Shown: positions 1 through 62,141, counted from the first letter of the stretch. The stretch: DNA of 64,000 bases from Lepidodermella squamata (GCA_047495785.1 JBLDXI010000034.1:310001-374000); one strand, 5' to 3'. Notes: a model not told the origin generated them from the letters alone. Program-made: numbers and translations.

Positions 1-240
1 GTCAGACCGGCACCGGTTCCGGAAACCCCGGTTCCAGTCAGACCGGCACCGGTTCCGGAAACCCCGGTTCCAGTCAGACCGGCACCGGTTCCGGAAACCC
101 CGGTTCCAGTCAGACCGGCACCGGTTCCGGAAACCCCGGTTCCAGTCAGACCGGCACCGGTTCCGGAAACCCCGGTTCCAGTCAGACCGGTACCAGAAAC
201 CCCGGTTCCAGTCAGACCGGTACCAGAAACCCCGGTTCCA
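1..240 (+). repeat. Coding tandem repeat: 5 x 36 bp then 2 x 30 bp
   Basis: gtcagaccggcaccggttccggaaaccccggttcca repeated exactly from 1 to 180, then gtcagaccggtaccagaaaccccggttcca twice. Confidence 0.95.
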
Positions 241-1257
241 GTTAGACCGGTTCCAGCGGAACCGCCAGTTTTTGTCCCGGTCAGACCAGTTCCGGATCCT
301 CAATTACCCGAATGGCCGGTTCCTGAGTGGCCTTCACCAGTTAGACCGCCAGTGGATCCTCCAGCCCCAGTCAGACCAGTCATAGGTAAGATTCGGCAAG
401 CTCAAATTAAATAACTAATTTTTTAATTTTTTTTTAATTGTAATTATTTTATTTTCTCAACAGTACTAGACCCGGAGCCGATTTCTGGTTCGATCCCAGT
501 ACCAATCCGACCGCAGCCTGGTAATGAAAGAAAATTTATTAAATTGGAAAAAATACGATTAAAATTGTTAATATATTTATTTTAACTGATTAATTCAATT
601 TTAATAGAAATTCCAACTGTTCCAATTCGTCCGCCGATTCCTGTACCAGCCGAGCCCCAACCTGTCCCACCTAAACCCGAAATCGGTATGTCCTACTTTT
701 TTTTAGAAAATTATGTTACAATACCATTGAATTTAGAATTTCAATTCCCGGGAGAACAGGGTGGCCAAATCTGGTACATGTTCGACAGGCCCGAAGTTTC
801 GGCGACAGATTTCCGACCGATTCAAACTTTCAATCCGAGACCGACCGGAATTTTCGATCGCCCGGTTCCAGTGCCAGAGTCACCCTGGTCCCAGCAGCCG
901 AGCCCTGTTTGGCAACCCCATCAATGGGAGCCAGCTCCGCGCCCAACGATCACCCACATCCCGATCCCAGGGCCCCCGGGTCCTCCGGGCAAGCAAGGCC
1001 CGCCCGGTAAACCGGGTCGGCTCACCGAGAAGCACCTCGACTACCTCGCTGAGAAGGTGTTTGAAATGTTCAGCAGCGATGATGATGACGATGATGAGGA
1101 TGAGTCGAGCGAGGAGGAAGAAAAACCTCGTCGTCACCGCAATCGAAAATCAAGGAAGCACCGAAAACGGCGAGAGGAGTCGAGTGATGAAGAGGAAAAT
1201 CGCCGTCGTCATCAACGCAATCGAAAATCGAGAAAGCACCAGAAATTGCGCCATTGA
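1..1257 (+). CDS. 5'-truncated Pro/Val-rich protein with short collagen segment and acidic/basic tail (exons ~1-385, 463-520, 608-685, 737-1257)
   Basis: Frame +1 encodes (VRPAPVPETPVP)n. GT-AG introns join it to the 688-1257 ORF, which has [17 protein letters not shown], then LTEKHLDYLAEKVFEMF, poly-D/E and a duplicated R/K/H-rich block. AATAAA at 1317. Confidence 0.8.
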
Positions 1258-1357
1258 AGAAAATAACTGACAACGTTGAATTATTTAAATAATTATTTAT
1301 TTTGCGAATTTATGGAAATAAAATGTTTATTTGAAATTTTCGATTTTTTTAGGAAAA

Positions 1358-4300
1358 ATGAGTGATTTTTTTATTTCGCTCATTTTTTACGGTATTATTT
1401 TGATTTATTCAACAACATGCGAGGCGCCGAATGAAATTCTTATTGGTTGGTTCGTTAGATTTAAATTTTTCAATTTTAAATTTTTCAAATTCTTTTCAAT
1501 TTCAGGGAAAATCGAGAATGAGACTAGCACTGATTTCTTTGGCCTGGGACCTGAGGATAAGAATTTAGGCACTTTAAAATTTCTAATCATTTTCGACTTC
1601 TCAAAATTGGAAAATTGAAATTTTTAATAAATTTATTTATTCAATTTCACACAGAAATTTTCGAAATTTTAAATTTCAAAGTCCTAAAAATTCCCAATTC
1701 TCCCAAAAATTATATTTTTAACATTTATCGTTATTTTTTTTAATTTCAGGGAGAATCGATAACGAGACTAGCGTTGATTTCTTTGGCCTTGGACCTGAGG
1801 ATAAATCGCTGCTGACCAAATTATTGAGACCTGTGAGTTCGCGACGGAAACAGCCGCGAAAAACGCACCATAAACATCATAAACATCGCGATATGCCGCC
1901 AGGTAACTTAGCTTGGCCTTGTAAATTTTCGAATTTTATTCAAATTTCTTACCAGGTTACCAAGCAGCAGGCACCAACGGAATGCCGCGCAAAACAGGTG
2001 AGCTTTTAAAATTAAAATTAAAATTTCTTATTTCAAGTTATTTATTCTCAAAAAGGGCTCGAATATTTTTGAAATTTATTTCACATTTATGCAGGCTACC
2101 CAGGTATTATTGGGATGCCGGGAAAAACAGGTAAGATTTTAAAATGAAATTATTCTTATTTTATTTCATTGTTATTCTCAAACAGGGCCGCTAGGTAATT
2201 TTTCTGATTTTGTGGAAGCTTTTTTAATAATTAATATTTAGGGTTACCTGGTTGCGACGGACGCACCGGTCCACCGGGGTCAAGAGGTCATTTTCATTTT
2301 TGCGAACCAAATTGATTATAGGTTTGAATTTCAGGTCGTGATGGCGTTCCTGGTGCTGACGGAACGCCCGGGAAGCCAGGGAAACCTGGTCAACCAGGAG
2401 CTGATGGGTTACCGGGACCCATGGGTTCCAGGGGTGCCACCGGGCCCCCAGGTGAGCAGGGACATGTCGGCGAAACAGGTTAATTTCAAATCGAAGCTCC
2501 TGAAATTAAAAAAAATTGAGTAGGCCAACCTGGTATCCAGGGACCACCGGGCGCTCCGGGTCCTAAGGGCGACATGGGTCACCCGGGTGCTGACGGTCAA
2601 ACTGGCGCTCAAGGTATTATTGCTTTTTTACGATTTATTGGTTGACGCGATGATTCTTAGGTCGAACTGGCCAATCGGGGTTGAATGGGCTCCCTGGCCA
2701 AGACGGTAGACCGGGTCATGACGGCAAACCCGGGAGAAATGGTGTTGATGGGAGCCCAGGGTCACCCGGGCGCCCTGGACAACCTGGCTCCCATGGCCAG
2801 ACAGGTGATCAAGGCGAGAAGGGAAATGAAGGCGAACCAGGTCGCGATGGCTCACCCGGTCGGAAGGGTGACATGGGTCATCCGGGAGCATCGGGCAACA
2901 ACGGGTCACCTGGAATCCCCGGTAGCCCTGGTGAAAAAGGTTAGAAAAACTTTTGCGACTCATCAAACATTTTTAAAGTTCATTTTTTTAAAGGAAGAGA
3001 CGGCCTGAAAGGTGATCGAGGCCCAAAGGGGCCCTCGGGTGAGACTGGCCCTGCCGGTATGCAAGGCATGCCTGGACCTCATGGGAAAAACGGCTGTATT
3101 GGTAGTTAATTGAGAAATTAATTCCACTTTGATTCTTGGTTTTTCAAAGGATCACCTGGTCACCCGGGTGCAACGGGACCCACGGGTAATCTGTCATTTT
3201 TTTTTTAATTTGATCATCCTAACTTTTTGATGTCCAGGAATGGCCGGCCAGCGTGGTAAAAACGGAGAACCCGGCCCGCCGGGTACGAAGGGTGATTCAG
3301 GGTTCCCTGGTCGACCCGGCATCAAAGGCGACCATGGAGAAAAGGGTGACTTGAGTAATTTGAGGAATGAATCGCCGTCTATTCTTTCCAGTTTAGGTTC
3401 CGAAGGCGCAGCTGGAAAACCCGGAGTAGATGGAAAAGCTGGCACAACGGGAGACAAGGGCCGCATGGGTGCTCCGGGTGCTCGAGGCTCCAAAGGTATG
3501 GATATTTTTTCAACTAAATTCGTTTTTCTCCCCTTCTTATCTTCATTCTTAGGTCACCCTGGTACAACTGGTATGGACGGTCACAAAGGAGCTCCAGGTC
3601 CCTTTGGGCCCACTGGACACCAGGGTTATTTTTTCATATGGTGCAAAGAATTGTTTCCTAGTCTTTTGTTTTAGGGATACAAGGCTCCATGGGACACCCC
3701 GGCGCCCCAGGTGCTAAGGGTGATCATGGTGACACTGGACCGCAGGGTCCTACGGGTCACAATGGATGTCCTGGTATAAGCAGTTAAATGGCTTTAAATG
3801 ACATTTGAATCTAATTGATTTGCTAATTAGGGCAGCCTGGGTTACAAGGGTTACCTGGTCCAACTGGCGCCACAGGCAGGCATGGCGATAAAGGTGACGC
3901 TGGAGAACCTGGTAAGACATTTGCCGTCTTGCTGAGGGAATCCTCATCATATCACTAGATTTCGATCCTTATAGGCAATCAAGGGTCAATCGGACAGACT
4001 GGTCAGTCGGGAGCTAAAGGCGACTATGGCGAGCCAGGTCACCCGGGTAAAAAGGGTGATCAAGGTGCGTGAAGGGTGAAATTATTTTTATCCTGTGTCA
4101 ACATTTATTTCAAACAGGTCACCCTGGTCGAGATGGCGAAAATGGGTTTCCAGGTCAATCCGGCCTTAACGGTTGGAATATTTTTTTGAGAAATCTGAAT
4201 ACGTTTTTCATTTTCCCTATAGGTCGCCCAGGTCAACCAGGTGCTAAGGGTGACAAAGGCAAAAAGGGCCGCAAGGGTAAGCAAGGGTTGGATGGAAAGC

Positions 4301-5199
4301 CCGGGCCGATGGGTTCGATAGGACTGCCGGGACCTGAAGGTCAAACTGGTCCGAAAGGGTCGACAGGTCCCAGAGGTCCCGGAGGTAGACGTGGGAAAAC
4401 GGGGCCAACCGGAGACACCGGGGAGCCAGGTCCACCTGGAAAAGATGGAGCTACAGGTAATGAATTTTTTTCCTCTTGAGAATTCAGGTTTTTTAATTTA
4501 ATTCGATAGGACTCAGAGGACATCATGGTCGCAAGGGTGATCGTGGCTCTGATGGTCACCCTGGGTTGCAGGGTTCTAAGGGTGATCGAGGTAAGCACCC
4601 TTTGTTTAGGGTTTAGGGTTTACCGATTATTTAAATTATTTCAAAGGGAATACTGGGTTGACCGGGCCAGCTGGCAAAAATGGTTGGCCGGGTGTCGATG
4701 GTCTTCCGGGTGTTACGGGTGCTAAGGGTGTCAAGGGTAAAAATGGTCAACCTGGTCGCGATGGCCTCCCTGGATACAAAGGTATTTATACCAATATTCT
4801 GGATTTCCGTTGTTATAATCGATTTAAAAAGGTGAGCCTGGTTTGCCTGGTTACGGATTCCCCGGCGCCCCGGGTGTCGGCATTCGAGGGCCCCGAGGCC
4901 ACAGGGGCAGAGATGGCCGGCCTGGTAAACGAGGCCGAACCGGCCCTCCGGGTCCGCCTGGCAAAGTCAGCATGAAAGATTTCCGAATAATGCTGCAAAT
5001 GTTCCTACGCGAAATTCGAGGGAACGCTGATCAGCCGCCGCCGTACCAACCTCAGCCGGGCCCATTTTGGCAATTTGAAGAGAGCTACGCGCAATGGCCG
5101 AAAAATAGCGGCGAATCGGCGGAAAATTCGGCCAGTTGCGAATCTCACGAAGTCAGAAAATCACACGTCAGAGATTTTGCAAGGAAAAAATTCCGATGA
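1358..5199 (+). CDS. Secreted collagen with many short phase-1 Gly-X-Y exons and a short C-terminal non-collagenous domain
   Basis: Signal peptide [23 protein letters not shown], a His/Lys-rich N-terminal stretch and continuous Gly-X-Y exons split G|GN by ~50-60 nt introns. Ends [27 protein letters not shown]...; AATAAA at ~5276. Confidence 0.9.
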
Positions 5200-5296
5200 C
5201 CTGAATGTTTTTGAATTATTTTTGGCACAAATTAAATAATTATATTTACACCGTTAAAATATTTCAAAAAATGCCAATAAATGTATGAAATCGATT

Positions 5297-8200
5297 TTAT
5301 TGAGCGTTTGAATCATCATTGGAATCTGAAAGATCCACCACAGAGGAGTTCGGCATTTCTACGGATTCCATTTCTTGTCGTTTCGAGAATGATGAGAAGA
5401 AATCGAGGGGCTTTTCGAAGGTAGGTTTTCCGCGCACTGAAACAACCATTGCGATCGTGACAAACTGGAGTTGATATCTAGATAAATAGATTAAATAATC
5501 AAAATTACCTTAAAAAATTTCCGTAAATTCCAAAAACAGGTAGAAATAATTCGAAATTATGAAAAATCGAGATAATTCAATCGGATTTTTTTTACGGAAA
5601 ATCTTACTCTGTGCCTTGAGATCCAGTGCCGAAAGTTCGCCTGCCAACGACGTGACCAATCCTGATATTTTTAACATCATTCAGAAAAGCGACTTTCCCC
5701 TGAAGTTGATTAACGTTCCCCTTCGCTGCATTGGCTTCAAAAGCCGCCAGACGTTCACCAGTATAGACCTCTTCATCCTCATCATCGGAAATTGGCGGAG
5801 ATTCAACGTCACGACCTGGTTTTTTCTTACGCTTCGATGAATCATTCTCGCTTTCTGAACCTTTATCACTATTCTCAGCGTCTTCATCGAATTGCTCCCG
5901 CAAGAAATCAGAATTGCTAGCGATTACCCGACGCGTGTAATTAAGGCGAGGAAAGGTCGACCGTTCCGGATCATAAACTTCAACCTGAAAAAAATCGAAT
6001 GCAAAAAATGAAAATTCCTCCTTAAAAATTATTTTGAAATAAAAATTTGACAATTCCTTCAACTCAAAATGATTCTACATCTTGCTTTGATCATCAATTT
6101 CATCGATTTTTTGCTGGCTTCCAATGAAGTAGTTTTCACTGGGGTGTTGGGCCAAGTCGATTTTACTAGTCTCCCCAACAACGAACGACTTTTTGTTACG
6201 GAACGGCCTGAAAATGAAAACTTCACTCTAGGTGCAATGAGTGGCCTTCAGACGCTTGCCTTCTTCCTAGACAAAGGCATAGCTTCGGGCATCAACACGA
6301 ACTTCACGATTCTGGTCGATATGACAATCGACGTTGTGAAGCGAGCGACAAGCGAACATCTTGGTCACCACAAATCATCGTATGTCATCAAGCCATCAGC
6401 AATTGTCGTGAGTTTCAGCCGGGGGATGTTCGCACAAGCGATAGAGGACAAGGATTGTCGAAGGGAAAACACGGTAGTTGGCGAGGCTACTGGGACAGCT
6501 GCTGAAATGTGGACTTTAGACCCTACAACAACCGGGGCGATTCTTTTGGCTGTGCCAAGCGCTGATCCTTACTACAACGAGCGATCTCTGTTATGGCCTA
6601 TCATTCTTCTGGCTGATAAGGGCGCTACTCTCCCGCTTCGTTGTGTTCGAGAGTCTTGGAAATGTAAAACGGATGTTTTGGGGGATTCCGGTGCGAAGAA
6701 GTCAGTTATTGCCGTCACTTCGCAGTTGAGGATTCGTTTGTCGGGGCCGGATTCGCAGCGAATTCGAGTTTTGGCTCATGCTGACAATCCTGATCGGGTT
6801 AGTAAGGTGTACGCAGCGATGGAAAAGCTGGCTGTTACTGAAGTCAACACGCAAGTGGCAGTTGACCAGCCTAAGTGCTTGAATCACGGCCAGGTATAGA
6901 TTTTCTTTCAAGTTTCCGGATTGTTTTCGGACAAAGGACGCAATGGTGTCCATGTAAATGTTTGCATACTTTCAGATAAGATGCAGTTACTCTTTCAACG
7001 TCAACCCACTTCGAAAAATCGGCCAATTCGCCTGCCAATTCAACAAACCAGGCCATTCAAACTTGTGGTGGCTCTGCAACGACTTCGGCCTTTACCCATC
7101 CCAGTACACTAACCAGATCACCGACGGCCGAATAATCGTCGCAATCTACGGCGATCCGCCCTACTACGAAGAAGAATGCATCGGCGTTTCGTCAAACTGG
7201 CTGCATTACAACGCATCGAGCGACCAGTTCTCCCAAGTTCCGACTAAGCACCTGAAGCATTCGCTAAATTCAGTGCAAATTACGCTAACAACAAGCAGTG
7301 ATATGTACAACGCTTATCGCTGTGTTGTGAAGACCAGGCAAACCACGGTTACGTTGAGGGAGTTCTACTACAACGCTGCGTCTCGATACGTATCAAAGTG
7401 CGAATTCCAATCGTCGGGTGTTTCTAGCTCGTCAAAGTCAGTAGCTAGTTCTGTTGAGGTAACTGGAGGTGAGAGTGCCCTTATCTATAGCACAAAATGC
7501 CAGCTAACGAAATCAGCCTCCCGTTTGAACCCATCAGTCCGAGCTTTTGCGTATCTTTCGAACGAAACAGAAAATGAATTCACCTTTCGATCGGAACCAA
7601 TCATTGAAGCTAACATGACAATCATACCAGGCGTTGATATGGAATTGGAAATTGGTATCTATTTCGACTCAAGTCAAGCTTTACTTGACCTAGCTCGAGA
7701 GAAACGAAGCCCGGTTCAGGCAGGTGGCCAACTTCAATATGGACCTATGAATATGATTGCGGAGATCTGGCTCCTTCTCGAAGGTGTTAGTGAAGTTCAC
7801 TTGAGGGTCCTAACACTTCCTATCACTTTTTATATCCCTGCAAATAGAGCTTTAGATCTAGAAGACTCGTCCAACTAGGATTGAATAAAGATGCACTTAC
7901 TTGAACGTAGACTGAAACGTTCGATTGAATCGACTCTTTGAAATACGTTTCAGCACTTCGTTTTGCGTGGTTGTCCTTCCCAAGGCCTTCGATAGTCACG
8001 AGGACAGGTACCAGGTCTACCTTGTAATTATTCACGGTCTTCAAAGCTGTCCATAAGCTTCGATCGATGCCCTTTAGAGAAAACGGGTCTATTTTAAGGC
8101 TGGGCATTGGATATCGATTTTGCACGAAGATTCCACAGCTTTTCTCATCCCAGCGAGACATTTTGAACAGTTGGCTAAAACCTGCTGTGATTTTCCTTTC

Positions 8201-10247
8201 GAATTCAATCAAACTTTTCTCGGTTGTTTTCAATTTTTCGACAACGTCCTTTGCTTCAGTGTCGATGAAAAGGTCGTAAACGAGTACGAGAAGAGCTCCG
8301 TCCAAAACTCGAGAAAACTCGTGTGGCCGATCGGCATAACAACAGAAAAACTGACATCTGGAAGTGCAAATGGGAAATATTCAAATAATATGGGAAAAAT
8401 CAGAAGATTAAATTGGACTTCTAAAATTCTTTTTAAATTTTAAAATTTCGCAAAATATTAAAAAGAAAAATACCTAAAATTATTTTGAAATATTTTCGAA
8501 ATTTTTAAAATTGATAAATGAAAGAATAATTATTTTTTGGAAATTAGCATTTTACCCAATTTCTCGAATTTCAATCACGCTCAATGTTCAATATCTGAAA
8601 TGTTTCGAAAATTTTGAATTTATACCTTCCAACATCTTCCGGAACTCCAATAGGTTCGAAGGACTGGCTTACTTTCCCGTAATGAGCCGTAAATTTCGCG
8701 CCGACAAAATCGCTCGGCAGAACTACGTACATGTAAGCAAACGGCTTCAGCCCAATAATTTGAGCCGGATTCTCCGAGTTGGAATGTTCTTCAATTTTCT
8801 CCGGGTGTTTGAAACCACTGCCAAACTGCAAGGCGATCATCCTATTAAGGCGGGCGGACATTTTCGGCGAAAATGGCGCCAAGACGCCACGGATTGAATC
8901 TAAGAGTCGACTTTTCGATGAATCACTTATCAGTTCTAACCAGCTTGTTGACTGAATTTCAAGCTGGGTTTTTGTGAAAAATACATTTTGACGGGAAAGG
9001 CCAAAAAGGAATGAAATAAACCAACCTTATCAATTGGAATATACCACGAATAGTTGAGTTCGTGATTCAGAACATTGATTTGATGGCCCATTTGAGGTTT
9101 AGCATTTAGGCCTGACGATATCGGAATATGCTAAAATTAAAAATTTGAAACAATTTTGGCGAAATTTAACTTTCGAAATGAAAATGAACGATCGCGATTT
9201 TTTTAGTAATTTATTTTGATTTTAGATAATTAATAAAAAAATATCCGGAAATTGAATCGGTAGTTTTGGCCATCGTATAATTAAAATTTGGTTAATTTAA
9301 ATTTAAATTTGACCTTGAAATTTTTTTAATTTTTTATTTCAATTTTCAAAATTTAAATCAAATTCAGAATTAAAAAAATATTAAAATTATTAGTTCAAAC
9401 CTCTGACAATGGATTAGTACATTTCCCAGATGTTTGGATTGCTTTTTTCACCGAAGCCGAGTCGCATGGGTACCTGAGACGTACTGGCGGCTGGGAGGTT
9501 GCCTCAGAACCAGCAGCTACCTCATCCTTACTGGCCGCAATCAAAATCGCCGGCGTAGAATCGATAACTCCCGAACATCGCAAATCGAATTCCGGCACTT
9601 CGCCAGTGTTCGCTGATTTTCGATTTCGAACTAGAAATTCGTTCAATTCATGGATCAGTTCCTTCTCAAGGCAAGCTATTTTTGACATGTTTCTTATTCG
9701 GATTCGTTTCTTAGCAGGACTGACAACGGCCTCTTCCGGAACTGGATCTGGTTGTTTTTCAGCCGCATAATTGTGAATTATTTGCTCGGGATTCTGCTCA
9801 CTGCTTGTCGATGGCTGGTTGATGGAGACAACATTGGGCCCTACGACGGGTCTATTGGCAAATTTTCCCAAAAAATGTTGATGAAGAGTTCGAACTAAAT
9901 CAACTGAAATAAAAAATTAATTTCATAATTTTAAAATTTATTTGGATTATTCTCAAATTTTCATTAAGTCCACCTTAATTTTTTTAATATTTTACTTGAA
10001 ATTTTGAGAATTCTTCGAGTGATTTTGTATGAATTCAGCATCGAATTTCGCCCGATTGAACTGAAAAATTATGTTTACCTCTGTACAGTGAAGTTTTCAG
10101 GCGCTGTCGTTTGGCTTCACTTACGAGGTCTTCTTTCTTGAAGAATTGAAAGGCGAACTTTCTATTGCCGCATTTCAGCCACGCGCTTTCGATTCGGCTG
10201 AGATTTTTGCGGTGAATGGGGCCAACACCCCGATAATGAGTTGTCAT
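5297..10247 (-). CDS. 2OG-Fe(II) oxygenase-like (prolyl-4-hydroxylase-like DSBH) protein with NLS-like motifs; 7 exons
   Basis: Exons ~10247-10079, 9903-9401, 9131-9027, 8964-8626, 8357-7901, 5984-5608 and 5477-5297 splice in frame. Motifs WYIPIDKLEIQSTSW, VVLPSDFVGAKF, YADRPHEFSRVLDGALLVLVYDL and NRYP..L....LKGID resemble a microbial-type 2OG-Fe(II) oxygenase family. Recognised by eye, not searched. Confidence 0.7.
6069..7878 (+). CDS. Nested antisense gene, ~575-aa secreted protein of unknown function (exons 6069-6893, 6976-7878)
   Basis: Signal-like N-terminus MILHLALIINFIDFLLAS. A phase-0 GT-AG intron joins two long ORFs; several N-x-S/T sites; AATAAA at 7884. Lies entirely in host intron 5985-7900. 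Confidence 0.75.
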
Positions 10248-11485
10248 GATTTATCCGAAATTAATCGCAATTAACGGCAAATAACCTAAAATATCAAAAC
10301 AAAGCAAAATGATGGGAAGTTGCTAGAAAATGCTGAGGATTTTTGATATAAGCTCAGAATTCAAGTGTTAGCATAAAATGGGGCACCAGTCGTTTCTTTG
10401 TGCAAGATGTTGCCCACGTAAGCAATAAAACCGGCCACCACACAACGCTAGTTGGCAATAAAAAAGAATGAATGACCTGACCCAATTGTGGTGACCCAGT
10501 TCACTATCACAATCACAATGGCGATTGTTTAGGCATATTTTTCGTTATAAACCGAACAATTTTTAAATTTTTGAAAAATGAAGGGGAAAATGAACCCGGT
10601 GTTATTAAAGCGGCGATCTTGAATGCAAAATAATATGGGAATTATTTTCCATTAACTTGGAATTTCTAAGAAAATAAAAAACCTAAAACTGAAATAACAC
10701 TTGATTCCCAACTTTTCTGTTATTTCGAAATTTTTTTATTCGCGAGGCCGCTGAATGTAAAAATAACCGCTAGAAATTACAGAAAGTGATTTTACACAAA
10801 AATCAGGGAATAATCGAGCAAGAGACGGGTTTTTCTTAATTTGTTTTTTTAATTCAAATGTTAAATTCCATTTCGCTTCTCCGACAAGTCGACCCTTTTC
10901 ACCTTTCACCTTTGTGCGCAATAAAAATGAATGACCTGACCCAATTGCGTTCACAATCATATTATAAAATAGGGCTATAATATCTGTCATGAATGTTTCA
11001 TCGTAATTTACCGACAAATTTGAAAATACCTAATATTTGAAAATATTTTTATAAAAATAGTCGAAAATCACTATATTTTAAATTCCTCGTCTAATGATTA
11101 ATTTATGCTCAATTTCTAAAAAACTAAAAATATATTACCTATAACACAAAAAATATCTTCGAAAATTCCCAAATCACTAATTTTTTTACTTAGATTTTTC
11201 ACGCTCAGGCATTCCGAGAATAGACGCATCATTTTATTCATTTTTATACTAATAATGATATAAGCATGTGGACGACGGAAAAACGGACGAGATCGTCAAT
11301 TCGAATATTTTCAACTTCGTTTTTAATTCATCAATGATGCGATTGAATTTTCATTTCGAAGGCGTCGTCGATAAGTCGCGATTGATAAATGCTAATTCTA
11401 ATTGCGTTAAACGATGAAATTTTCAAAAAACAAACTCAATCATCATTTGAATTATAAAATAATTTATCTTCAAAACTGACTCGTC

Positions 11486-14400
11486 ATGAGTAGCAGCGTG
11501 AGGTTCCAATTTGCGGCTATTATAATCATCGCGCTTTATTTGCTGACAAATGCCAAGAGCCAGGTAACCGTGGGTCCAGCGCCTGGAGCTACTGGTAAGT
11601 TTTATGCAGAAAATATTGTTTTAATTGTTTTTTTTTAAAGAGCAAAATTTTAATTATATTCCTTTCGTATTTTTAACAGGCCCAAAGGGCGAGCCGGGTG
11701 TCAAGGGTGACAAAGGCGACAAGGGTGACAAGGGAACAACTGGCGACAAGGGAGCTCCGGGTGTTCAAGGTTCAAAAGGCGATCCGGGTAAGTTATTTGT
11801 AATCCATATAGACAACAAGTTTTGAAGCTTTAATTCGTAATAAAAATGTTTGTACATGAATGAAAAATTAATTAAAAATAATAAAAATAATAAAAATTAA
11901 TTAAAATAATTAAAATTGAATTGAATTATGATAACTAATTCATCCCAAATATAAAACCATTTCTGATTTTTTGGTGTTATTAAATAATTTTGTAAAAAAA
12001 AATTTGCTCAGTTAATCCGCCAAAAATAACAGGAAAATATAAATTAATCAAAAATAATTAAAAATAATTCCCCAAGAATTACAGGAAAATCCCAGCTTAA
12101 TAATAGGTTTTTTTTGGCACCCATTGTTATAATTTTTAGGCAGCGAACCCTCTAGAACCTTCTGGACCTAATTATTTTATTTTCGAATTGTGAGTTTCAT
12201 AATCTTCAGTATTTTTTAATTTTTTATTGAAGGCGTCGATGGAGGCAAAGGCGACAAAGGCAACAAGGGAGATTTGGGACCGCAAGGCTCACAAGGCATA
12301 CAAGGCACCCAAGGCATACAAGGTGTGCAGGGTCCTGTTGGTTCCAAGGGTCAAAAAGGCGAACTGGGTGATATTGGATCAATTGGATCCATCGGCTCGA
12401 AGGGCTCTACCGGAGACAAGGGTGCCCAAGGTGATATGGGATCTATCGGCTCTATCGGCTCCGTTGGCCCAATCGGGTCAAAAGGTGACACGGGCGGTAA
12501 AGGATCAACTGGCGACAAGGGTGATCTAGGTGTTCCAGGTTCAAAAGGCGAACTGGGACCGCAGGGTACGATATTTCGAATCCATTTGAGACGGGCCCTA
12601 ATTTTCTTTGATACAAAACTAGGTTCGGCTGGAGCCGACGGAGCCGCTGGCTCGCAAGGTCTCAAAGGCGAAAAAGGTCAGTTTTCGAAATTCTCAATTG
12701 TTCTTTTCATAGTTTTCTGTTTTATTTATTCTATGTACTATTAAACAGGCGAGGTGGGCCTGCAAGGCTCAGCCGGAACTGATGGGATTGAAGGTGAGAT
12801 CAACTCTGCTCTCTTTTTATTTCTTATTCTGTTGAATTAATCCAGGAGCTCAGGGTGATACGGGTGATAAGGGTGACAAGGGTGATCAGGGCGAAATTGG
12901 CTCCATCGGGTCGATCGGCTCGAAAGGCTCCACCGGTGACAAAGGCGACCAAGGTGATGTTGGATCCATCGGCTCTATTGGTTCAAAGGGCGCCTCGGGT
13001 GACAAGGGCGACCAGGGTGATATTGGATCCATTGGATCCATCGGCTCGAAAGGCTCCGCCGGTGATAAAGGTGATCAGGGCGATATTGGATCAATCGGCT
13101 CTATTGGATCGAAGGGCTCCACGGGTGACAAGGGTGATCAAGGTGACATCGGCTCCATAGGATCTATCGGCTCGAAGGGTTCCACGGGTGATAAAGGCGA
13201 CCAAGGTGATATTGGATCAATCGGCTCTATGGGTTCGCAGGGCGCCACGGGTGACAAGGGTGATCAAGGTGACATCGGCTCCATGGGATCTATTGGCTCG
13301 AAGGGTTCCACCGGTGACAAAGGCGACCAAGGTGATATCGGTTCAATCGGATCGATCGGCTCGAAAGGTTCCACGGGTGACAAGGGTGATCAAGGCGATA
13401 TTGGATCGATCGGATCGATCGGCTCAAAGGGTTCCACCGGTGACAAAGGCGACCGTGGCACGGACGGCTCGAAGGGTGATCAGGGCGTTATTGGATCATT
13501 CGGATCCATCGGCTCGAAAGGCTCCACCGGTGACAAAGGTGACAAAGGCAACAAGGGTGATTTGGGACCGCAAGGCTCCCAGGGCATCCAAGGCGTCCAA
13601 GGCATCCAAGGTGTACAGGGTTCAATTGGTTCCAAGGGTCAAAAGGGCGAACTAGGTGATATTGGATCTATTGGCTCGAAAGGTTCAGCTGGCACAAACG
13701 GGTCGAAGGGTGACGATGGAGACAAAGGCGACAAAGGCAGCAAGGGTGATCTGGGACCGCAAGGCTCACAAGGCACCCAGGGCATCCAAGGTGTGCAGGG
13801 TTTCATTGGTTCCAAAGGCCAGAAAGGCGAACTGGGTGATATTGGATCTATTGGCTCGAAAGGTTCCGCTGGCACAAACGGTTCCAAAGGTGACGACGGA
13901 GACAAAGGCGACAAGGGCAGCAAGGGTGATTTGGGACCGATGGGCTCTCAAGGCATCCAAGGTGTGCAAGGTGCAATTGGTTCCAAGGGTCAAAAAGGCG
14001 ACCTAGGTAACGTCGGATCGATCGGATCTATTGGCTCGAAGGGCTCAACTGGTGACAAGGGTAACCAAGGTGATATCGGATCAATTGGATCAATCGGCTC
14101 AAAGGGCGCCACAGGCGATAAAGGCGATCAAGGTGATATTGGATCGATCGGCTCTATTGGCTCGAAAGGCTCCACTGGTGACAAGGGTGATCAGGGCGAT
14201 ATTGGATCAATCGGTTCCATCGGCTCAAAAGGTTCCACTGGTGACAAGGGTGATCAGGGCGATATTGGATCTGTCGGATCCATCGGTTCCAAGGGCGACA
14301 CGGGTGACAAAGGCGACAGTGGCACGGACGGCGCAAAGGGTGACAATGGTGTCCAAGGTGACATTGGCTCCATCGGCTCGAAAGGCTCAACTGGTGACAA

Positions 14401-15981
14401 GGGTGACAATGGCAATAAGGGTGATTTGGGACCGCAGGGCTCACAGGGCATCCAAGGCGTCCAAGGCATCCAAGGTGTGCAGGGGGTGATTGGATCCAAG
14501 GGTCAAAAAGGCGACCAAGGTGATATTGGTTCCATCGGATCTATTGGCTCGAAAGGTGCCGTTGGCACAAACGGTTCTAAAGGTGACGATGGAGACAAAG
14601 GTGACAAAGGCAGCAAAGGTGACTTGGGACCGCAAGGCTCACAAGGCATCCAAGGTGTGCAGGGTGCACTGGGTTCCAAGGGCCAAAAAGGCGAACTGGG
14701 TGATATTGGATCCATCGGCTCGAAGGGTTCAGCTGGCACAAACGGGTCGAAGGGTGATGACGGAGACAAGGGTGACAAAGGCAGTAAGGGCGACATGGGC
14801 TCACAAGGCATCCAAGGCATCCAGGGCATCCAAGGTGTGCAGGGTTCCATTGGTTCCAAGGGTCAAAAAGGAGAACTAGGTGATATTGGATCTATTGGCT
14901 CGAAAGGTTCCGCTGGAACGAACGGGACGAAAGGTGACGATGGAGACAAAGGCGACAAAGGCAGCAAGGGTGATTTGGGACCGCAAGGTTCTCAAGGTAT
15001 CCAGGGCATCCAGGGCATCCAAGGTGTACAGGGTTCCATTGGTTCCAAGGGTCAAAAAGGCGACCAAGGTGATATTGGATCAATTGGATCCATTGGTTCG
15101 AAGGGCTCCACTGGTGACAAAGGTGATCACGGTGACATTGGATCCATCGGATCCATCGGCTCGAAGGGCTCCTCGGGTGACAAGGGTGACCATGGGGACA
15201 TTGGCTCTATTGGTTCGAAAGGCGCTACTGGCGACAAAGGTACCCAAGGTGATATCGGTTCAATGGGATCCATCGGCTCGAAGGGTTCTATGGGCGACAA
15301 AGGAGATCAGGGTGATATTGGTTCAATGGGATCGATCGGCTCAAAGGGTTCCACTGGCGACAAAGGTGATCAGGGTGATATCGGATCCATCGGATCCATG
15401 GGTTCCAAGGGCGCCACCGGTGACAAAGGTGACAGTGGCACGGACGGCGCGAAGGGTGACAAGGGTGCAGCAGGCCTAAATGGTCTACAGGGTGCAAAGG
15501 GTGAATCGGGCGGTCAGGGCATCCAAGGTTCAGTCGGTTCGAAAGGTGACAAGGGTGATGTTGGCTCGAAGGGTGCGGATGGTCTTCCGGGTTTAGTTGG
15601 TCTATCTGGTTTGGCTGGGATCCTGGGCCCTCAAGGCTCGAAAGGCGACAAAGGATATAAAGGTAACCCTTTCGCCTTAATAATCGCCCGAATCACTCGG
15701 TACTTTTAAATTTGTACAGGTGATAAAGGTGACAAAGGATTGACTGGTCAAAAGGGCGAAATTGGTATTTTTTATTTAAAAAAAATATATAAATGTATTA
15801 TTGAACATGATTTATGAATATAGGTTTCGGTGTACCTGGTTACGGTTACCCTGGAATTCCTGGTCACCCTGGCAAACCTGGTCGGCCGGGTAAACCTGGC
15901 CGTGTTGACATTCCCAGACTTAAAGATATTTGTTCTGAATTATTCGCCGAACTTCTTTCTGAAAATTTGGAATCTAAATAA
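11486..15981 (+). CDS. Large secreted proline-poor collagen-like protein (~1,200 aa, GSK/GDK/GSI/GDQ triplets)
   Basis: Signal peptide [25 protein letters not shown]. About 8 exons, including one ~2.8-kb exon (~12847-15662) of uninterrupted Gly-X-Y. Ends [31 protein letters not shown]. Confidence 0.9.
12860..15460 (+). repeat. Coding higher-order repeat built from 63-bp (21-aa [21 protein letters not shown]) units interleaved with [12 protein letters not shown]...GQKGELGDI blocks
   Basis: Visible directly in the translation and DNA, with synonymous variation between units. Confidence 0.9.
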
Positions 15982-16443
15982 ATTTATATTTTCTTCACGT
16001 GAGTGATTAATTTGTTGGATGAAAATGGCCTGAGCCTCATTTTCAAAGTTCCTTTCAGGAAAAATAGCGACTTTCCCACCTTTATATTTCGGCGTATAGG
16101 GTCATTTTCGATGACAGCAGCGGCGATCTTATATAGGTTCCAATGATCGCCTTGTTATAAGCAAAATGCGAAAATTCGAAAAAATGCGTGAATAATTCTG
16201 TGGCTGTAATGGTGATAATCAAAATCAAAATCAAAATCGGAGAAAATTAATAAAGTGTTACGATTATGTGACATTTATAATCGTTGAAAATCATTACTAT
16301 TTTTCATCATAACGCAGTGATTAGGCCTCATAGATACTGAATTTTCTTTTTAAATTTTCTGGAATCAAAATGATCGGAAAATTTCAGGAGACTTTAATAG
16401 AGTGGCATATTTAGGCCCATTAAATTTGGTTCTGCTAAAATTG

Positions 16444-16780: not shown

Positions 16781-17480
16781 TATTAAACTAAAAGTTTATT
16801 CGAATTTCGTTCTCATTTTTAGGTAAATTTAAGAAATTATAATATTTTAAAATTTTTCAATATTTTTTCAATTTCAATTTATAGTGAAAAATTCCCGATG
16901 GGCAAAAGATCGAATATTAGAATTTTATTTTTCAAAAATAAAAGAGTGACACGGTTTTAGTATTATCGATTGATCCGATGGCTTCGAATTGCGTTCTAAA
17001 ATTATCCTAAAAAAATAAGCAAATTTGAAAAATTGTGATCACCGAGTCGTATTCCGTCAACTGATTCTCGACTATTTAGAAAACAAAAACTCAGCCATGA
17101 CTTCTCATGCCACAACAACTCAGCGTTTATTCAATTATGGAAATGTGAGCCGGACTGAGTATTTTCCAAACATTCAACACATAATGAATCTCTCGTGTTG
17201 GTTTTAGCAGCCTATTGGCAATCGCAGCTTAATAGGGACATTTCTTCTGAATTATTCGCTGAACTGATAATTTTGAATATAGAATAATTATATTTTTATT
17301 GCTGCGTGATTAATTCGAAGGATAAAAACGGACCACGGCTCACTTTTAGAGATAACGGAAGCGCTTATCAGCGCAAATAACACGACACAAACACTTGTTT
17401 TGTTATCTCAGTAACCCTTCCGAGTTGGCTTATAGGGTAATTTTTGATAATTCGGTCAGATTCATTTTTTTTCATTTCAA

Positions 17481-24083: not shown

Positions 24084-25532
24084 ATGGGAAACGTATCCAA
24101 ATGGTTTCTTTTCAGTCTCTTTGGAATTTCCATGGTTAGCTTTTTTATCGCCGCCCAGTCGAACGATGGATCGGTAAGAAATGAAATTAAAATGAAAAAA
24201 AACTGGATAGGAACAGAGCCCTTTGATATATTCATTCCAACTTAGCTTTTCATCGAATCTGTGGCAAATGGTAACATTTCCATTGTAACACAACTGCTCG
24301 CTCATAACAAATCGCTGGCCAATGCTAGATTCTCACGTTTGCCTTATGTTGAAGGGCTTAACCCGAAGTTCAGGAATGAAGGCTCATTCCCGGTTCTGGA
24401 AGTCGCAGCAGCTTATAACCAAAGTTACGAATTGGTAAAGCTACTTCTCGACAACGGTGCTCAGGTGGATGCGGGCGATTACGGAGTTGAGAGTGACGGA
24501 AGAACAGCCTTACAGTGGGCGGTCCTCAACGATAGAACAGACCTTGTCGAACTTCTTCTCAGATACAACGCAAGCACGGCTAGGAGAGATAGAGGTGGCT
24601 GCGATGCTCTGTATCACGCTGCCGAGTCTGATAATCTTGACATGGTCAAATTTCTTGTCTCGAAAGGCGCCGCAATCAACTCAACCTACGACGGAAAGAA
24701 TTTGGTCCATGTCACAGCTCTATTGTGTAAACCAACAATTTTGCAGTACTTCCTATCGCTAGATCTACCAGCTGATGCTGAGACAGATCGCAAATCGCGG
24801 GCTATTTGCTTTTGCCCTCAGAATCCTAATGTAGCGAAACTGCTAGTGTCAAAAGGCGCTAACGTGAATGGTTTATGTGACGACGAGCCTCTGATAATCT
24901 CTGTGATGCATCAAGATTTAGCAGTCGATACGCTTCGAGTTCTGATCGACAATGGCGCGAATGTTAGCGCTGTTTCGTCGCAAAGTGGCGAGACTGTGTT
25001 GCAATTAGCTGCTTCTTATACTAAGGCTGAGATCGTCCGACTTTTGATTGAAAAGGGCGCGAAAATGACCGTGGACGCACGGGGCTATTCATTGTCGCTG
25101 AGAGCTGCCTTGGGTCAACTTCCAGCTGACAAAGCTAGATTTGTCGATATTTTGAACTACTTGTTGGATAAAGGCGACGTGATTGATGGAAAATTGACGC
25201 GTAATGAAACATTCCTGTCAATGGTACTCAAGAATACTAACAGCTACAGCATTATGCTGCCATTTGTCAAGCTAGCCGTTGAAAGGGGCAAGGCGAATGT
25301 CAATAAGACGGATGCGGATGGCCGTAATGCTTTGCACCTAGCGGTCTTGAATGACTCGGACGGATACACAGATGATAAAGTTGAAACTATCAAATATTTG
25401 GTGTCTAAAGGCGTGAATCGAAATGCGAAGGACAAGCGTGGAAAAACGGCTCTACAATATGTTAGGGAGAGTCGATATTACGCGCAACATCAGGCCCAAC
25501 GTCAAGTTATCATCAATCTGTTGAGTCGTTGA
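24084..25532 (+). CDS. Secreted ankyrin-repeat protein (exons 24084-24173, 24246-25532)
   Basis: Exon 1 encodes MGNVSKWFLFSLFGISMVSFFIAAQSNDGS. A phase-0 intron joins it to an intronless ORF of about 10 ANK repeats (GRTALQWAV, GCDALYHAA, GETVLQLAA, GRNALHLAV, GKTALQY). Confidence 0.85.
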
Positions 25533-39074: not shown

Positions 39075-41363
39075 TAATTTTGGCTGCTTGAGTGTTTCGC
39101 TTAGAGATTAACCTGTTAATTATCATCAGCATAAACACTGACATGAACAGTTCTCAGCCAAATGCAAGGCTGTCTTATTACGGCAATCAAATGCGTCGAT
39201 GATGACTAGGAGATTCGTCAGGATTATCAGCATCATCTTCATTGCCGTGACATGCAGCTGCCTTCAACGAAGCGTCGCACCTTCGTTCCTTGTAGCATTC
39301 ACTTTGCCCTTGTTGGCGCGTAGTGCCTCTACCAACTCGACGTGGCCACGGCTGGCGGCAACATCCAGTGGCGTCGAGCCATAATTTGTGGCCCTATTCA
39401 CGTCGGCGTTGAACTCGCCAGCCAACATCCTCACCACCTCGACGTGGCCATTCTGGGCGGCGACGTACAGTGGAGTCGCGTCATTTATATTCGCAGAATC
39501 TACTTTCGCCTTGAACTCGCCAGCCAACATCCTCACCACCTCGACGTGGCCATTCTGGGCGGCGACGTACAGTGGAGTCGCGTCATCTATATTCGCAGAA
39601 TCTACTTTCGCCTTGAATTCGCCAGCCAACATCCTCACCACCACGACGTGGCCATTCTGGGCGGCCACGTGTATAGGCGTCCAGCCATCCTTATCGGCCC
39701 TATTCACGTCGGCGTTGAACCCGCCAGCCAACATCCTCACCACCTCGACGTGGCCATTGTAGGCGGCTGCAAACAGTGGAGTCGCGCCATCATTCATCGA
39801 AGAATCTACTTTCGCCTTGAACTCGCCAGCCAACATCCTCGCCACCTCGACGTGGTTGTTGAAGACGGCGATGTGCAATGGCGTCGCGCCCTTGGCATTA
39901 CGAACTTCTAGTTCCGCCTGAAATTGCTCGACCAGAGTCTTCACAATGTCGCTGTAGCCTTTCCGAGCAGCAAGGTACAACAGAGGACGCCCCTCGTCGT
40001 CTTTGCAATCAGGGCTAAGACCTAGGTCCCTGTTCAACAGCAATAGCACCAATTTCAACATGTCTTTCTGCCGACAAACGCAGTCAAATAGCTCCTGATA
40101 ATTAAAATTACTAACGCCTGAATGAATTGTAACATAATCCGTTGCTACCTTAACAGCCTCTTGGTTAGGTCGAACGAATGACTGGTCTGGCTGAAGAATG
40201 AAAGGGTTGATGCATCAAGGTTGCAACATTTTAGATGTTTACCTTTGTATACCGCATGGGTGCTGATTTCAATAGAAAACTGTGTTCTTGAAGCTGACTT
40301 GAGTTCGGTCGATTGTCAGGATTGACGGAAAGCATTGTCATGACAAATTCTCGGAATTCATCGGAATAGCCACGTGATTCGTCAAATGGTTTAAGGTTAT
40401 TACTACAATGTTATAGATTTCAGTCGGAGGACACTGTGTCAAACTGAAAATACCTCAAAATACCCGGCGAAGAGATGAACTGGAAAATTAGTTAAAACTC
40501 AGTAAGTATAACTCAGTCAAGATAATTCTCATACTGGTACATAGAAGTTGGCTAATTTGAAGAGCGCGAATCCCAACGACCAAACGTCACTTGCAGGGGA
40601 TTTCGGTCGACCGTTCAATACCTCTGGAGGTGAAGTGCTCCACTTAGCTAGAGCGTGTTGGCCACTGTTTTCGGCATCTAACTTATTTCTTATTAAAAGC
40701 TCATTTTCCAACTTACATTTCCAATTTCTCAATGATTCCCAAATCAGCTAGTTTCGATGTGCTACGGTCTGCCGTCAAAAGTACATTGCTTGTAGTTATA
40801 TTTAGATGAACGATATTTCGGTCGTGAAGATAAGCTAAAGCAGGTACGAGTTGGCGGGACCATATTTGAAGCATAATTTCCGGGATGGGTCTAGTCTCAG
40901 GTGTGATCAGGCTTTCGAAGCTTCCTCCCCCGCAAAACTCCATCACCAAATATCTCATCATGCAGTTGCGAGAAGAAGAATCATCACCGGAATATGTCTC
41001 TATAGTTGGAATATTATTAAGAAGAACTAAGAGGAGTAGAGCATTACCTTCGAAAGCGCCGAACACTTTGACAATGTTTGCATGGCTGATATCGACCATC
41101 AACAAATCCTGAGATTTGAAAATATGACATGAATTATTGTGGTTATGGCGAAAACTCACTCTTTCGTGGAGAAGTTCAGCAATTTTGTCGAAGTGTTTTT
41201 CGAAAGTCTTGCGAAGGGTTGTCAAGTTGGTTTCTTTGATAACCACTTGCTGTTGATCACGCCCGTTACGTTTGCACAACATAGGTTGTCGAAGGCCGCC
41301 ATAACGCAAGACTTTACCAACAGTGAACTCCGACATAGATCGAGGATAATTTCTTGGTTCCAT
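39075..41363 (-). CDS. Pseudokinase-ankyrin repeat protein, copy A (C-terminus frameshifted at ~39270; possibly decaying)
   Basis: VVIKE, YLVMEFCGGGS, IVHLNITTSNVLL, KLADLG, PPE, SDVWSLG, then 34-aa ANK repeats. The tail aligns to copy B only across frameshifts. Confidence 0.8.
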
Positions 41364-62000: not shown

Positions 62001-62141
62001 ACGAAATTCCAAGCAAACATCGCTGTCTTAGATCGCCGTAATAAGACAGCCTTGCATTGGGCCACGATCTGCGATAAAAGTGTTTCTGCTGATGACAAGC
62101 GCAAGACTATCGAAATACTCGAGCGGCCAAAATTAAACTAG
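59096..62141 (+). CDS. Pseudokinase-ankyrin repeat protein, copy B (apparently intact, 7 exons)
   Basis: Kinase-fold exons (VVIKE, IVHRNITTSNVLL, KLADLG, APE, SDVWSLG, VNPDDRP) splice in frame into the 429-aa ORF with about 10-11 ANK repeats. Confidence 0.85.
59329..59723. mobile_element. 395-bp MITE with perfect 30-bp TIRs and 8-bp TSD (P-element/hAT-like) in intron 1 of kinase copy B
   Basis: tattttgg-CATGAGACGTACTATAGGACGCCGCGGCTT...AAGCCGCGGCGTCCTATAGTACGTCTCATG-tattttgg; absent from copy A. Confidence 0.92.

What the first reader, a model, noticed from the sequence alone, without database searches (positions are those of the whole stretch)
961..15981. Three clustered collagen-domain genes share a collagen-IX NC2-like C-terminal helix: possible modular trimer system
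Seen: each Gly-X-Y tract ends in a similar junction and amphipathic helix: PGKPGRLTEKHLDYLAEKVFEMF (gene 1), [23 protein letters not shown] (gene 2) and [24 protein letters not shown] (gene 3). Genes 2 and 3 also share a PGYG(F/Y)PG interruption just upstream. Known: the collagen IX NC2 domain is a short helix after a PGR/PGK junction that drives trimerisation and chain selection. Inference: one trimerisation module is fitted to three very different rods (a polyproline-like repeat with ~6 triplets, a conventional collagen, and a Pro-poor giant collagen), possibly forming a lineage-specific secreted fibre, cuticle or glue system. These lack nematode cuticle-collagen and fibrillar COLFI architecture.
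Basis: partly seen in the sequence, partly recalled or inferred. Interest (0 to 1): 0.75.

Follow-up and report, generated by a model that had tools for sequence, protein, structure and literature searches.

The report
Shared end-cap helix on nine collagens
Three neighbouring genes of a small invertebrate end in the same short module, a few collagen triplets followed by one amphipathic helix. Six more collagen genes in the genome carry it, so it is probably a family-wide device for starting triple-helix assembly, but descent from the collagen IX NC2 domain is not shown.

Summary
All three quoted tails and both PGYG(F/Y)PG interruptions lie at the stated places, each in the last coding exon of an intact + strand gene.

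- **Family size:** the module is not limited to these three genes. Own-genome searches find nine copies: four on this contig, four on contig C31 and one on C11.
- **Shared design:** all nine align without gaps and end rods ranging from 6 triplets to at least 950 triplets. In the eight collagens the module sits in a terminal exon that opens with a phase-1 split glycine codon.
- **Conserved pattern:** seven columns are hydrophobic in 9/9 copies, one is basic in 8/9 and one acidic in 8/9. Shuffle z is 16.8 for nine copies. For the three window tails z is 4.8, reached by 1 of 20,000 shuffles.
- **Structure:** AlphaFold2 predicts a 22-residue helix starting three residues after the last triplet in genes 1 and 3.
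- **NC2 link:** the tails of genes 3 and 1 pick collagen IX NC2 as their best match among solved structures (E 0.006 and 0.034), in the register of NC2's hydrophobic core. The match needs the Gly-X-Y part. Helix-only queries find nothing, other members do not repeat it, and a chance contactin hit scores nearly as well.

Heterotrimers among the three window genes are implausible. Expression, oligomer state and presence in other species are untested.

The parts
1..1257 (+). Gene 1, the part inside the window. The full gene has 5 exons and encodes 544 aa. Exon 1 lies 951-786 bases before the window; the other exons are at -427..385, 464-520, 608-685 and 737-1257. It has a signal peptide, then proline-rich 12-residue repeats, then the module.
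   Evidence: ORFs and sequence; 36/66-nt tandem repeats. All four introns are GT-AG, phase 1. An AATAAA follows the stop.
970..1017 (+). Gene 1: its only Gly-X-Y tract, six triplets
   Evidence: The Pfam Collagen match is only 15.3 bits, below the 27.2 cut-off.
1018..1092 (+). Gene 1: junction Arg plus amphipathic helix
   Evidence: Alignments A2/A3. AlphaFold2 predicts a helix at residues 29-50 of window:943-1254, i.e. 1027-1092; pLDDT is 94-97 in the core.
1072..1254 (+). Gene 1: unconserved tail made of one acidic block (a shorter acidic stretch interrupts the basic part) and two basic blocks
   Evidence: AlphaFold2 predicts a second, basic helix with pLDDT about 80.
1358..5199 (+). Gene 2: conventional collagen, 22 exons, 816 aa. 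It has a signal peptide, a run of 203 uninterrupted triplets and a further 10 triplets, and 14.7% Pro.
   Evidence: Exon model in which every junction is GT-AG, all 21 introns are phase 1, and 19 of them are 45-63 nt. Pfam Collagen match.
4832..5199 (+). Gene 2: terminal exon, made of the interrupted triplets, a basic Gly-X-Arg/Lys cluster, GPPGPPG, the helix and a 58-residue unconserved tail
4846..4866 (+). Gene 2: PGYGFPG, the first of two Gly-X-Gly register breaks
4963..5019 (+). Gene 2: junction Lys plus conserved helix core (alignment columns 8-26)
   Evidence: The leave-out profile gives E 2.5e-5.
11486..15981 (+). Gene 3: proline-poor giant collagen, 8 exons, 1,222 aa. It has a signal peptide, a run of 380 uninterrupted triplets and a further 7 triplets, and 2.1% Pro.
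   Evidence: Exon model; Pfam Collagen E 3.9e-125 on the 826-aa exon
15824..15981 (+). Gene 3: terminal exon
15835..15855 (+). Gene 3: PGYGYPG register break
15901..15975 (+). Gene 3: junction Arg plus amphipathic helix
   Evidence: AlphaFold2 predicts a helix at residues 29-50 of window:15826-15978, i.e. 15910-15975; mean pLDDT 87. The leave-out profile gives E 4e-8.

Best explanation
The three tails are copies of one C-terminal 'end-cap' module of a paralogous collagen family with at least nine genes in this genome.

The module has four parts.
- Several Gly-X-Y triplets, often rich in Arg/Lys at the X and Y positions.
- A GPPGxPG clamp.
- A Lys/Arg junction with an invariant hydrophobic residue after it.
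- An 18-22-residue amphipathic helix whose hydrophobic stripe is flanked by a conserved basic and a conserved acidic residue.

In the eight collagens it is encoded in the terminal exon. Gene 1 carries it in the middle of a larger terminal exon.

The proposed mechanism is inferred. After translocation into the ER, the three helices of three chains pack into a small bundle. This brings the adjacent GPP-rich and Gly-X-Arg-rich triplets into register and nucleates a triple helix, which then zips toward the N-terminus. Because the helix sequences have diverged between paralogues (22-31% identity), the same segment probably also keeps the different collagens from mixing. Each window gene would then form a homotrimer.

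In function this matches what NC2 does in collagen IX and what the neck does in collectins. Descent from NC2 is not shown.
For: **Shown**
- Nine ungapped-alignable copies exist, all immediately before unconserved C-terminal tails of 6-60 residues.
- Columns 9, 14, 17, 18, 21, 22 and 25 are hydrophobic in 9/9 copies. Column 15 is basic in 8/9 and column 24 acidic in 8/9. Shuffle z = 16.8.
- The hydrophobic positions follow an i, i+3, i+4, i+7, i+8, i+11 spacing, i.e. one face of a helix.
- The leave-out profile recovers all three window tails as the top three hits.
- All eight collagen copies have the module in a terminal exon whose acceptor splits a Gly codon in phase 1.
- AlphaFold2 gives a helix at the same place in genes 1 and 3, with pLDDT of 88-97 in gene 3 and 94-97 in the core of gene 1's helix.
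- The rods differ hugely: 6 triplets up to at least 950 triplets in one exon. The module is therefore the constant part.
- Signal peptides are readable in all three window genes.

**From the literature**
- Collagens fold from a C-terminal nucleus toward the N-terminus and need a trimerisation domain next to the helix (PMC5126661; abstract of PMC11923368).
- In the NC2 crystal structure the hydrophobic core begins at Ile44 (PMC5126661). In the printed alignments this residue falls on family column 14.
Against: - No oligomer state was measured or modelled, because only monomer prediction was available.
- The conserved core is short, 12-13 residues (columns 14-26), shorter than NC2 or a collectin neck. 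It may be too weak to trimerise on its own.
- Expression and secretion were not shown.
- No relative was found outside this genome, so conservation rests on paralogues only.
- Gene 1 has only six triplets and fits the profile least well (E 2.8e-3, aligned mainly on the junction).
Confidence: 0.6

Rival explanations
1. The module is a true homologue of the FACIT NC2 trimerisation domain. It would be an ancient NC2-type domain kept here as a C-terminal cap.
For: - With 14 Gly-X-Y residues included, the gene 3 tail's top five hits among 177,635 solved-structure sequences are all collagen IX NC2 chains: alpha1, alpha3 and alpha2, E 0.006-0.09, plus one at 3.9.
- The only hits of the gene 1 tail are NC2 chains, E 0.034-1.4.
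- Both align with the same one-residue gap after Gly-Arg.
- That alignment puts NC2's I-K-x-V-C-x-x-V-I-x-E on family columns 14, 15, 17, 18, 21, 22 and 24.
- A plain (Gly-Pro-Hyp-like) model peptide scores only 10.7 bits against 20 for NC2.
Against: - The helix-only query and the helix-only profile find no NC2 at E <= 10.
- The family profile that includes 7 Gly-X-Y residues ranks NC2 eighth, at E 0.36.
- The gene 2 and C11 tails give no NC2 hit, and the C31 tail gives only E 0.39.
- An unrelated contactin-1 chain scores at E 0.04-0.16.
- The collagen XIX NC2 present among the fetched proteins has a different hydrophobic spacing and is not hit.
- No collagen domain follows the helix, and no other FACIT hallmark is present.
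Confidence: 0.2
2. The helix is conserved for some purpose other than trimerisation. Possibilities are a docking site for a chaperone, processing enzyme or matrix partner, or part of a C-propeptide that is removed after secretion.
For: - The conserved core is very short.
- Basic Gly-X-Y clusters (Arg/Lys-Gly-Lys-Arg type) lie just upstream in five of nine copies, and basic residues end five of nine tails. These could be convertase or glycosaminoglycan-binding sites.
- The conserved Arg (column 15) and Glu (column 24) could equally be ligand contacts.
Against: - A continuous hydrophobic stripe six residues deep on an otherwise charged, secreted peptide needs to be buried.
- Its fixed distance from the last triplet in all nine copies is what a registration device requires.
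- No candidate partner gene is evident in the window; the neighbouring ORFs have no Pfam match.
Confidence: 0.15
3. The resemblance among the three tails is chance: any sequence after a collagen tract can look helical.
For: Plain residue identity among the three window tails alone is not significant (z = 1.3). The helix-only leave-out profile finds only gene 3, at E 0.064.
Against: - Pattern test: z = 4.8 for three tails and 16.8 for nine.
- Pairwise links in searches of the whole genome: E 2e-8, 5e-8, 1e-4, 5e-3 and 6e-4.
- The leave-out profile ranks the three tails first of 1,542 frames.
- The eight collagens share the same exon design.
Confidence: 0.03

Closest known systems
NC2 trimerisation domain of collagen IX (FACIT collagens; PDB 5CTD/5CTI/5CVA/5CVB; PMC5126661)
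   Same: - A Gly-Pro-rich end of a triple helix is followed by a Gly-Arg/Lys junction, a 5-6-residue cap and an amphipathic helix.
- In the printed alignments the hydrophobic, basic and acidic positions coincide at seven signature columns.
- It is the best solved-structure match for two of the three tails.
- Its known role of trimerisation, chain selection and stagger setting is the role proposed here.
   Different: - The cap is one residue shorter here and the conserved core is roughly half as long.
- The module ends the protein instead of lying between two collagenous domains.
- There is no Cys pair at a COL1/NC1 junction and no TSPN, vWA or FN3 domain.
- The similarity is not significant once the Gly-X-Y residues are removed.
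Alpha-helical neck of collectins such as surfactant protein D, and the coiled coils of class A scavenger receptors and MACIT collagens XIII/XXIII/XXV (PMC5126661, PMC4678570)
   Same: A short parallel helical oligomerisation segment directly adjoins a collagen triple helix and nucleates or registers it.
   Different: - Those are classical heptad coiled coils of four or more heptads.
- In collectins a lectin domain follows the neck.
- In MACITs the coiled coil lies N-terminal, next to a membrane anchor.
- Here there are only about two heptads, a wide a/d/e/g-type stripe, and nothing structured afterwards.
C-terminal (GPP)n nucleation clamp of fibrillar collagens, and Gly-X-Arg stabilising triplets
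   Same: In seven of nine copies a GPPGxPG motif ends the helix. In several it is preceded by Arg/Lys-rich triplets, as in known high-stability nucleation ends (my own knowledge of collagen peptide work).
   Different: There is no COLFI C-propeptide. Here a single helix takes its place.
Nematode cuticle collagens
   Same: They form a large paralogous family of invertebrate collagens with short non-collagenous ends.
   Different: No conserved Cys clusters flank the Gly-X-Y blocks. No Col_cuticle_N match was seen in the frames scanned. The rods reach hundreds to at least 950 triplets.

Membership tests
Collagen triple-helix repeat (Pfam PF01391) | Gly-X-Y repeats scoring above the curated cut-off (27.2 bits) | tested here: met
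   Met for gene 3 (408 bits) and for a gene 2 exon (67.5 bits). Not met for gene 1, whose last exon reaches only 15.3 bits with six triplets. Gene 1 is a proline-rich protein with a collagen-like stub.
FACIT collagens / NC2 domain | Significant sequence or profile similarity of the non-collagenous helix to NC2 | tested here: inconclusive
   With Gly-X-Y context, E is 0.006 (gene 3) and 0.034 (gene 1), and NC2 is the top hit. There is nothing for gene 2 or C11, and 0.39 for C31. The profile with 7 Gly-X-Y residues gives E 0.36. Helix-only searches give nothing. A chance contactin hit appears at a similar level.
FACIT collagens / NC2 domain | NC2 lies between two collagenous domains (COL2-NC2-COL1) | tested here: not met
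   In all nine copies the helix is followed by 6-60 non-collagenous residues and a stop codon.
FACIT collagens / NC2 domain | Two conserved Cys, four residues apart, at the COL1/NC1 junction | tested here: not met
   No such pair is seen in any tail. Isolated Cys occur near the junction in four copies and inside the helix in gene 3.
FACIT collagens / NC2 domain | N-terminal TSPN/LamG, vWA or FN3 domains | tested here: not met
   Gene 3 runs from the signal peptide into triplets within 33 residues, and gene 2 within 94 residues. No such Pfam match was found in the frames scanned. The short N-terminal segments were read, not scanned.
Fibrillar collagens | C-terminal COLFI propeptide (PF01410) | tested here: not met
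   The Pfam scan of the three terminal exons shows only weak Collagen matches.
Collectin-type neck | Heptad coiled coil of at least about 4 heptads, followed by a C-type lectin domain | tested here: not met
   The conserved stripe covers 12-13 residues, and no domain follows it.
Nematode cuticle collagens | Col_cuticle_N domain and conserved Cys clusters flanking the triplet blocks | tested here: not met
   No such Pfam hit appeared in the frames scanned, and no Cys clusters are seen in the gene 2/3 models. N-terminal exons were read rather than scanned, so this is a partial test.
The nine-member end-cap family defined here | GPPGxPG, then Lys/Arg, then a hydrophobic residue, then x4 and h(+)xhhxxhhx(-)h, placed in the last exon | tested here: met
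   All three window tails fit without gaps. Leave-out profile E is 4e-8, 2.5e-5 and 2.8e-3. Gene 1 departs at column 15 (Asp) and column 24 (Met).

The most novel reading that the evidence does not exclude
The module is an ancient NC2-type trimerisation and stagger-setting domain that predates the FACIT collagens. This lineage uses it as a universal C-terminal cap. Its nine diverged helix sequences form a chain-selection code that keeps nine collagens sorted in one ER, from a 6-triplet stub to micrometre-long proline-poor rods. It would be one of the shortest natural collagen trimerisation tags known.
Probability: 0.15. Interest if true: 0.7.

Novelty: new variant of a known kind. Interest (0 to 1): 0.48.

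Why it matters
Every collagen needs a neighbouring domain that brings three chains together in register, and only a handful of structural classes of such domains are known (PMC5126661).

A module of about 30 residues that ends nine very different rods in one genome would be a compact natural trimerisation tag. These rods include nearly proline-free giant collagens, whose folding is hard to explain.

The nine diverged helices offer a ready-made set for testing how short helices encode chain selection.

If the likeness to NC2 proves to be homology, the origin of that domain would move well outside the vertebrate-centred FACIT family. If it is convergence, it shows the same solution found twice.

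All of this rests on sequence alone. Nothing here shows that the proteins are made or that they trimerise.

Tried and rejected
1. **Profile search of the representative library.** I searched 1.84 billion representative proteins with the 32-column family profile. The three hits were all spurious repeat proteins. The search was underpowered: unseen members score only 14-29 bits in the leave-out test, far below what that library size requires. The genome's own proteins are apparently not in the library either. The blank therefore says little.

2. **Word-index search with gene 3's 826-aa exon**. It returned only generic collagens at 31-47% identity. No hit carried the tail pattern.

3. **Word-index search with the 292-aa first large exon of the C34:457k paralogue**. 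The aim was to find orthologues through its non-collagenous N-terminal domain and inspect their ends. Only the collagen fifth of the query matched anything.

5. **Heterotrimer idea for the three window genes.** Rejected because of their mismatched helix lengths.

6. **Salt-bridge reading of the conserved Arg15/Glu24 pair.** Considered and dropped. The two residues flank the stripe but are nine residues apart, so no specific pairing can be claimed.

7. **Fold search of the single-helix models.** Not run, because it would be meaningless for one helix.

8. **Taxon.** Not verified by me. Earlier scan notes call the animal 'probably a rotifer'.

9. **Spliced models.** They were joined only inside local scripts, to check frames and count residues.


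Full report
**What is there**

The window is G000:C34:310001-374000 of a 121-Mb animal genome with very short GT-AG introns. It is not human. Earlier scan notes call the animal 'probably a rotifer'; I did not verify this.

- **Gene 1** begins 951 bases before the window. It has five exons and encodes 544 aa: a readable signal peptide, a long proline-rich block built from 36/66-nt tandem repeats, only six Gly-X-Y triplets (970-1017), the helix, and then acidic and basic blocks.
- **Gene 2** (1358-5199) has 22 exons and encodes 816 aa. It has a signal peptide, a run of 203 uninterrupted triplets and a further 10 triplets, and 14.7% Pro. All 21 introns are phase 1, and 19 of them are 45-63 nt.
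- **Gene 3** (11486-15981) has 8 exons and encodes 1,222 aa. It has a signal peptide, a run of 380 uninterrupted triplets and a further 7 triplets, and 2.1% Pro.

The PGYG(F/Y)PG motifs are real (4846-4866 and 15835-15855). Each sits within a few residues of the start of the terminal exon, and each region contains two one-residue Gly-X-Gly register breaks.

Joined exon models were used only in local scripts, to check frames and count residues. All searches and folds used single exons by reference.

**The module is family-wide**

Six-frame searches of the whole genome with the gene 3 tail, then with alignments of the tails, found nine copies and no more. This is a lower bound, because the tool scores only the best candidates.

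The copies are the three in the window plus C34:457757, C31:747703, C31:921378, C31:1654717, C31:1687811 and C11:1427077. Each lies at the end of a collagen gene. These collagens range from short ones to rods with at least 950 triplets in a single exon and to cassette-amplified giants.

In all eight collagens the module occupies the terminal exon. The acceptor of that exon splits a Gly codon in phase 1. The exon carries 6 to about 13 triplets before the junction, and they are interrupted in three of the genes. After the helix come 6-60 unconserved, mostly charged residues and a stop codon.

**Conservation**

The nine tails align without a single gap when anchored on the end of the triplets.

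- Columns 9, 14, 17, 18, 21, 22 and 25 are hydrophobic in 9/9 copies.
- Column 15 is Arg/Lys in 8/9 copies and column 24 is Glu/Asp in 8/9.
- Overall identity is only 22-31%.

Against within-sequence shuffles, the class pattern scores z = 16.8 for nine tails. For the three window tails z = 4.8, and one of 20,000 shuffles reaches it. Plain residue identity among the three window tails alone is not significant.

A profile made from the six non-window copies ranks the three window tails 1-3 among 1,542 open frames of the window, with E 4e-8, 2.5e-5 and 2.8e-3. A helix-only version of that profile is weak and finds gene 3 only, at E 0.064.

Pairwise links in whole-genome searches reach E 2e-8.

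What is conserved is a helix face, not particular residues.

**Structure**

AlphaFold2 was run as a monomer with the nine sequences as the alignment. It predicts a helix at residues 29-50 of both the gene 3 and gene 1 terminal segments. The helix starts three residues after the last Gly-X-Y triplet. Block pLDDT over the gene 3 helix is 88-97; in gene 1 it is 94-97 in the core and falls to about 75 at the end.

The hydrophobic columns follow i, i+3, i+4, i+7, i+8, i+11 spacing. That gives a stripe about 140 degrees wide, flanked by the conserved basic and acidic residues, which is the kind of face that gets buried in a small helical bundle.

**Comparison with NC2**

- With 14 Gly-X-Y residues included, the gene 3 tail's five best matches among 177,635 solved-structure sequences are all collagen IX NC2 chains: E 0.006-0.09 for four and 3.9 for the fifth.
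- The only matches of the gene 1 tail are NC2 chains, E 0.034-1.4.
- Both alignments use the same one-residue gap. They place NC2's Ile44 on family column 14. The crystal-structure paper names Ile44 as the start of the NC2 hydrophobic core (PMC5126661). The next NC2 core residues and a Glu then fall on columns 17, 18, 21, 22 and 24.

That is a good lead, but several results count against it.

- The helix alone finds nothing, and the helix-only profile finds no NC2.
- The profile with seven Gly-X-Y residues ranks NC2 eighth, at E 0.36.
- The gene 2 and C11 tails give no NC2 hit, and the C31:1654k tail gives 0.39.
- An unrelated contactin-1 chain that happens to start with GPPGPPG scores at E 0.04-0.16.
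- The collagen XIX NC2 in a fetched protein has a different spacing and is not hit.
- The FACIT layout is absent: nothing collagenous follows the helix, and there is no Cys pair and no TSPN, vWA or FN3 domain.

I conclude that the module works like NC2, but its membership of the NC2 family is unproven.

**Mechanism proposed (inferred)**

The helices of three chains associate first. This holds the neighbouring GPPGxPG clamp and the Arg/Lys-rich triplets in register, and the triple helix then zips toward the N-terminus. This is how the literature describes collagens in general (PMC5126661; abstract of PMC11923368).

Divergence of the helix between paralogues would give self-selection.

The three window genes cannot share one helix, because their lengths are 6, about 213 and about 387 triplets. 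Gene 1 would be a trimer with three proline-rich arms held at a short collagen-plus-helix stalk.

**Limits**

No relatives were found outside this genome. However, the profile search was underpowered, the genome's own proteins are not in the libraries, and no eukaryotic genome collection was available. Lineage restriction therefore cannot be claimed. Expression, secretion and oligomer state are untested.

The scan had already noted gene 3 as a nearly proline-free giant collagen, and had noted other giant collagens of this genome. None of the notes I retrieved mentions the shared end-cap. One follow-up report on an overlapping stretch was withheld.

Noticed in passing
window 17233-17351 (compare 15930-16048): A decayed second copy of the last coding bases and 3' flank of gene 3 lies 1,303 bases downstream, just before the tetraspanin gene. 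The 49-nt core is 71% identical. It looks like a remnant of a local duplication.
   Followed up: partly
window 1496-1620 versus 1750-1902: The first intron of gene 2 holds a diverged copy of exon 2, with the same opening peptide. This copy runs into a stop and has no usable donor site, so it is a dead duplicate exon or an unused alternative.
   Followed up: partly
window 2186-2194: A predicted 9-nt micro-exon (one Gly-Pro-Leu triplet) in gene 2 has good splice sites on both sides. Using it gives two introns of 55 and 47 nt instead of one atypical 111-nt intron. RNA evidence is needed.
   Followed up: no
L025 6139-6830 (G000:C34:456139-456830): The paralogue 146 kb downstream starts with a Cys-containing non-collagenous domain of about 230 residues. 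This domain has no Pfam match and no relative in the word-index protein search. It is followed by about 70 triplets and the same end-cap.
   Followed up: partly
terminal exons of gene 2 (about 4890-4940), L004, L005, L016 and L017: Five of nine copies carry a dense run of Gly-Arg/Lys-Arg/Lys triplets just before GPPGPPG. Several of these read as Arg-X-Lys-Arg, so they could be stabilising triplets, glycosaminoglycan-binding sites or convertase sites. Four copies also have a lone Cys within a few residues of the junction, which could form an interchain disulfide.
   Followed up: no
L031 5059-5877 (minus strand; G000:C34:308059-308877): Directly upstream of gene 1 and divergent from it lies a 272-aa ORF with a signal peptide, an Arg-rich block and a poly-Ser/Thr run. 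It looks like a small mucin-like secreted protein.
   Followed up: no
L031 44-71 and 1090-1486: A short ACCCTA (telomere-type) repeat and a 12-nt array of about 33 copies lie a few kb upstream of gene 1, in the interior of the contig.
   Followed up: no
window 42416-43012 (-), 50997-51542 (-), 57972-58646 (+): Three paralogous ORFs share a long conserved block (the same roughly 180-residue sequence family). They are interspersed with ankyrin-repeat genes at 24261-25532, 39264-40061 and 60852-62141.
   Followed up: no
window 6069-7878 (+): Two long open frames (276 and 306 aa) lie between genes 2 and 3 and have no Pfam match. They are possibly one lineage-specific gene.
   Followed up: no
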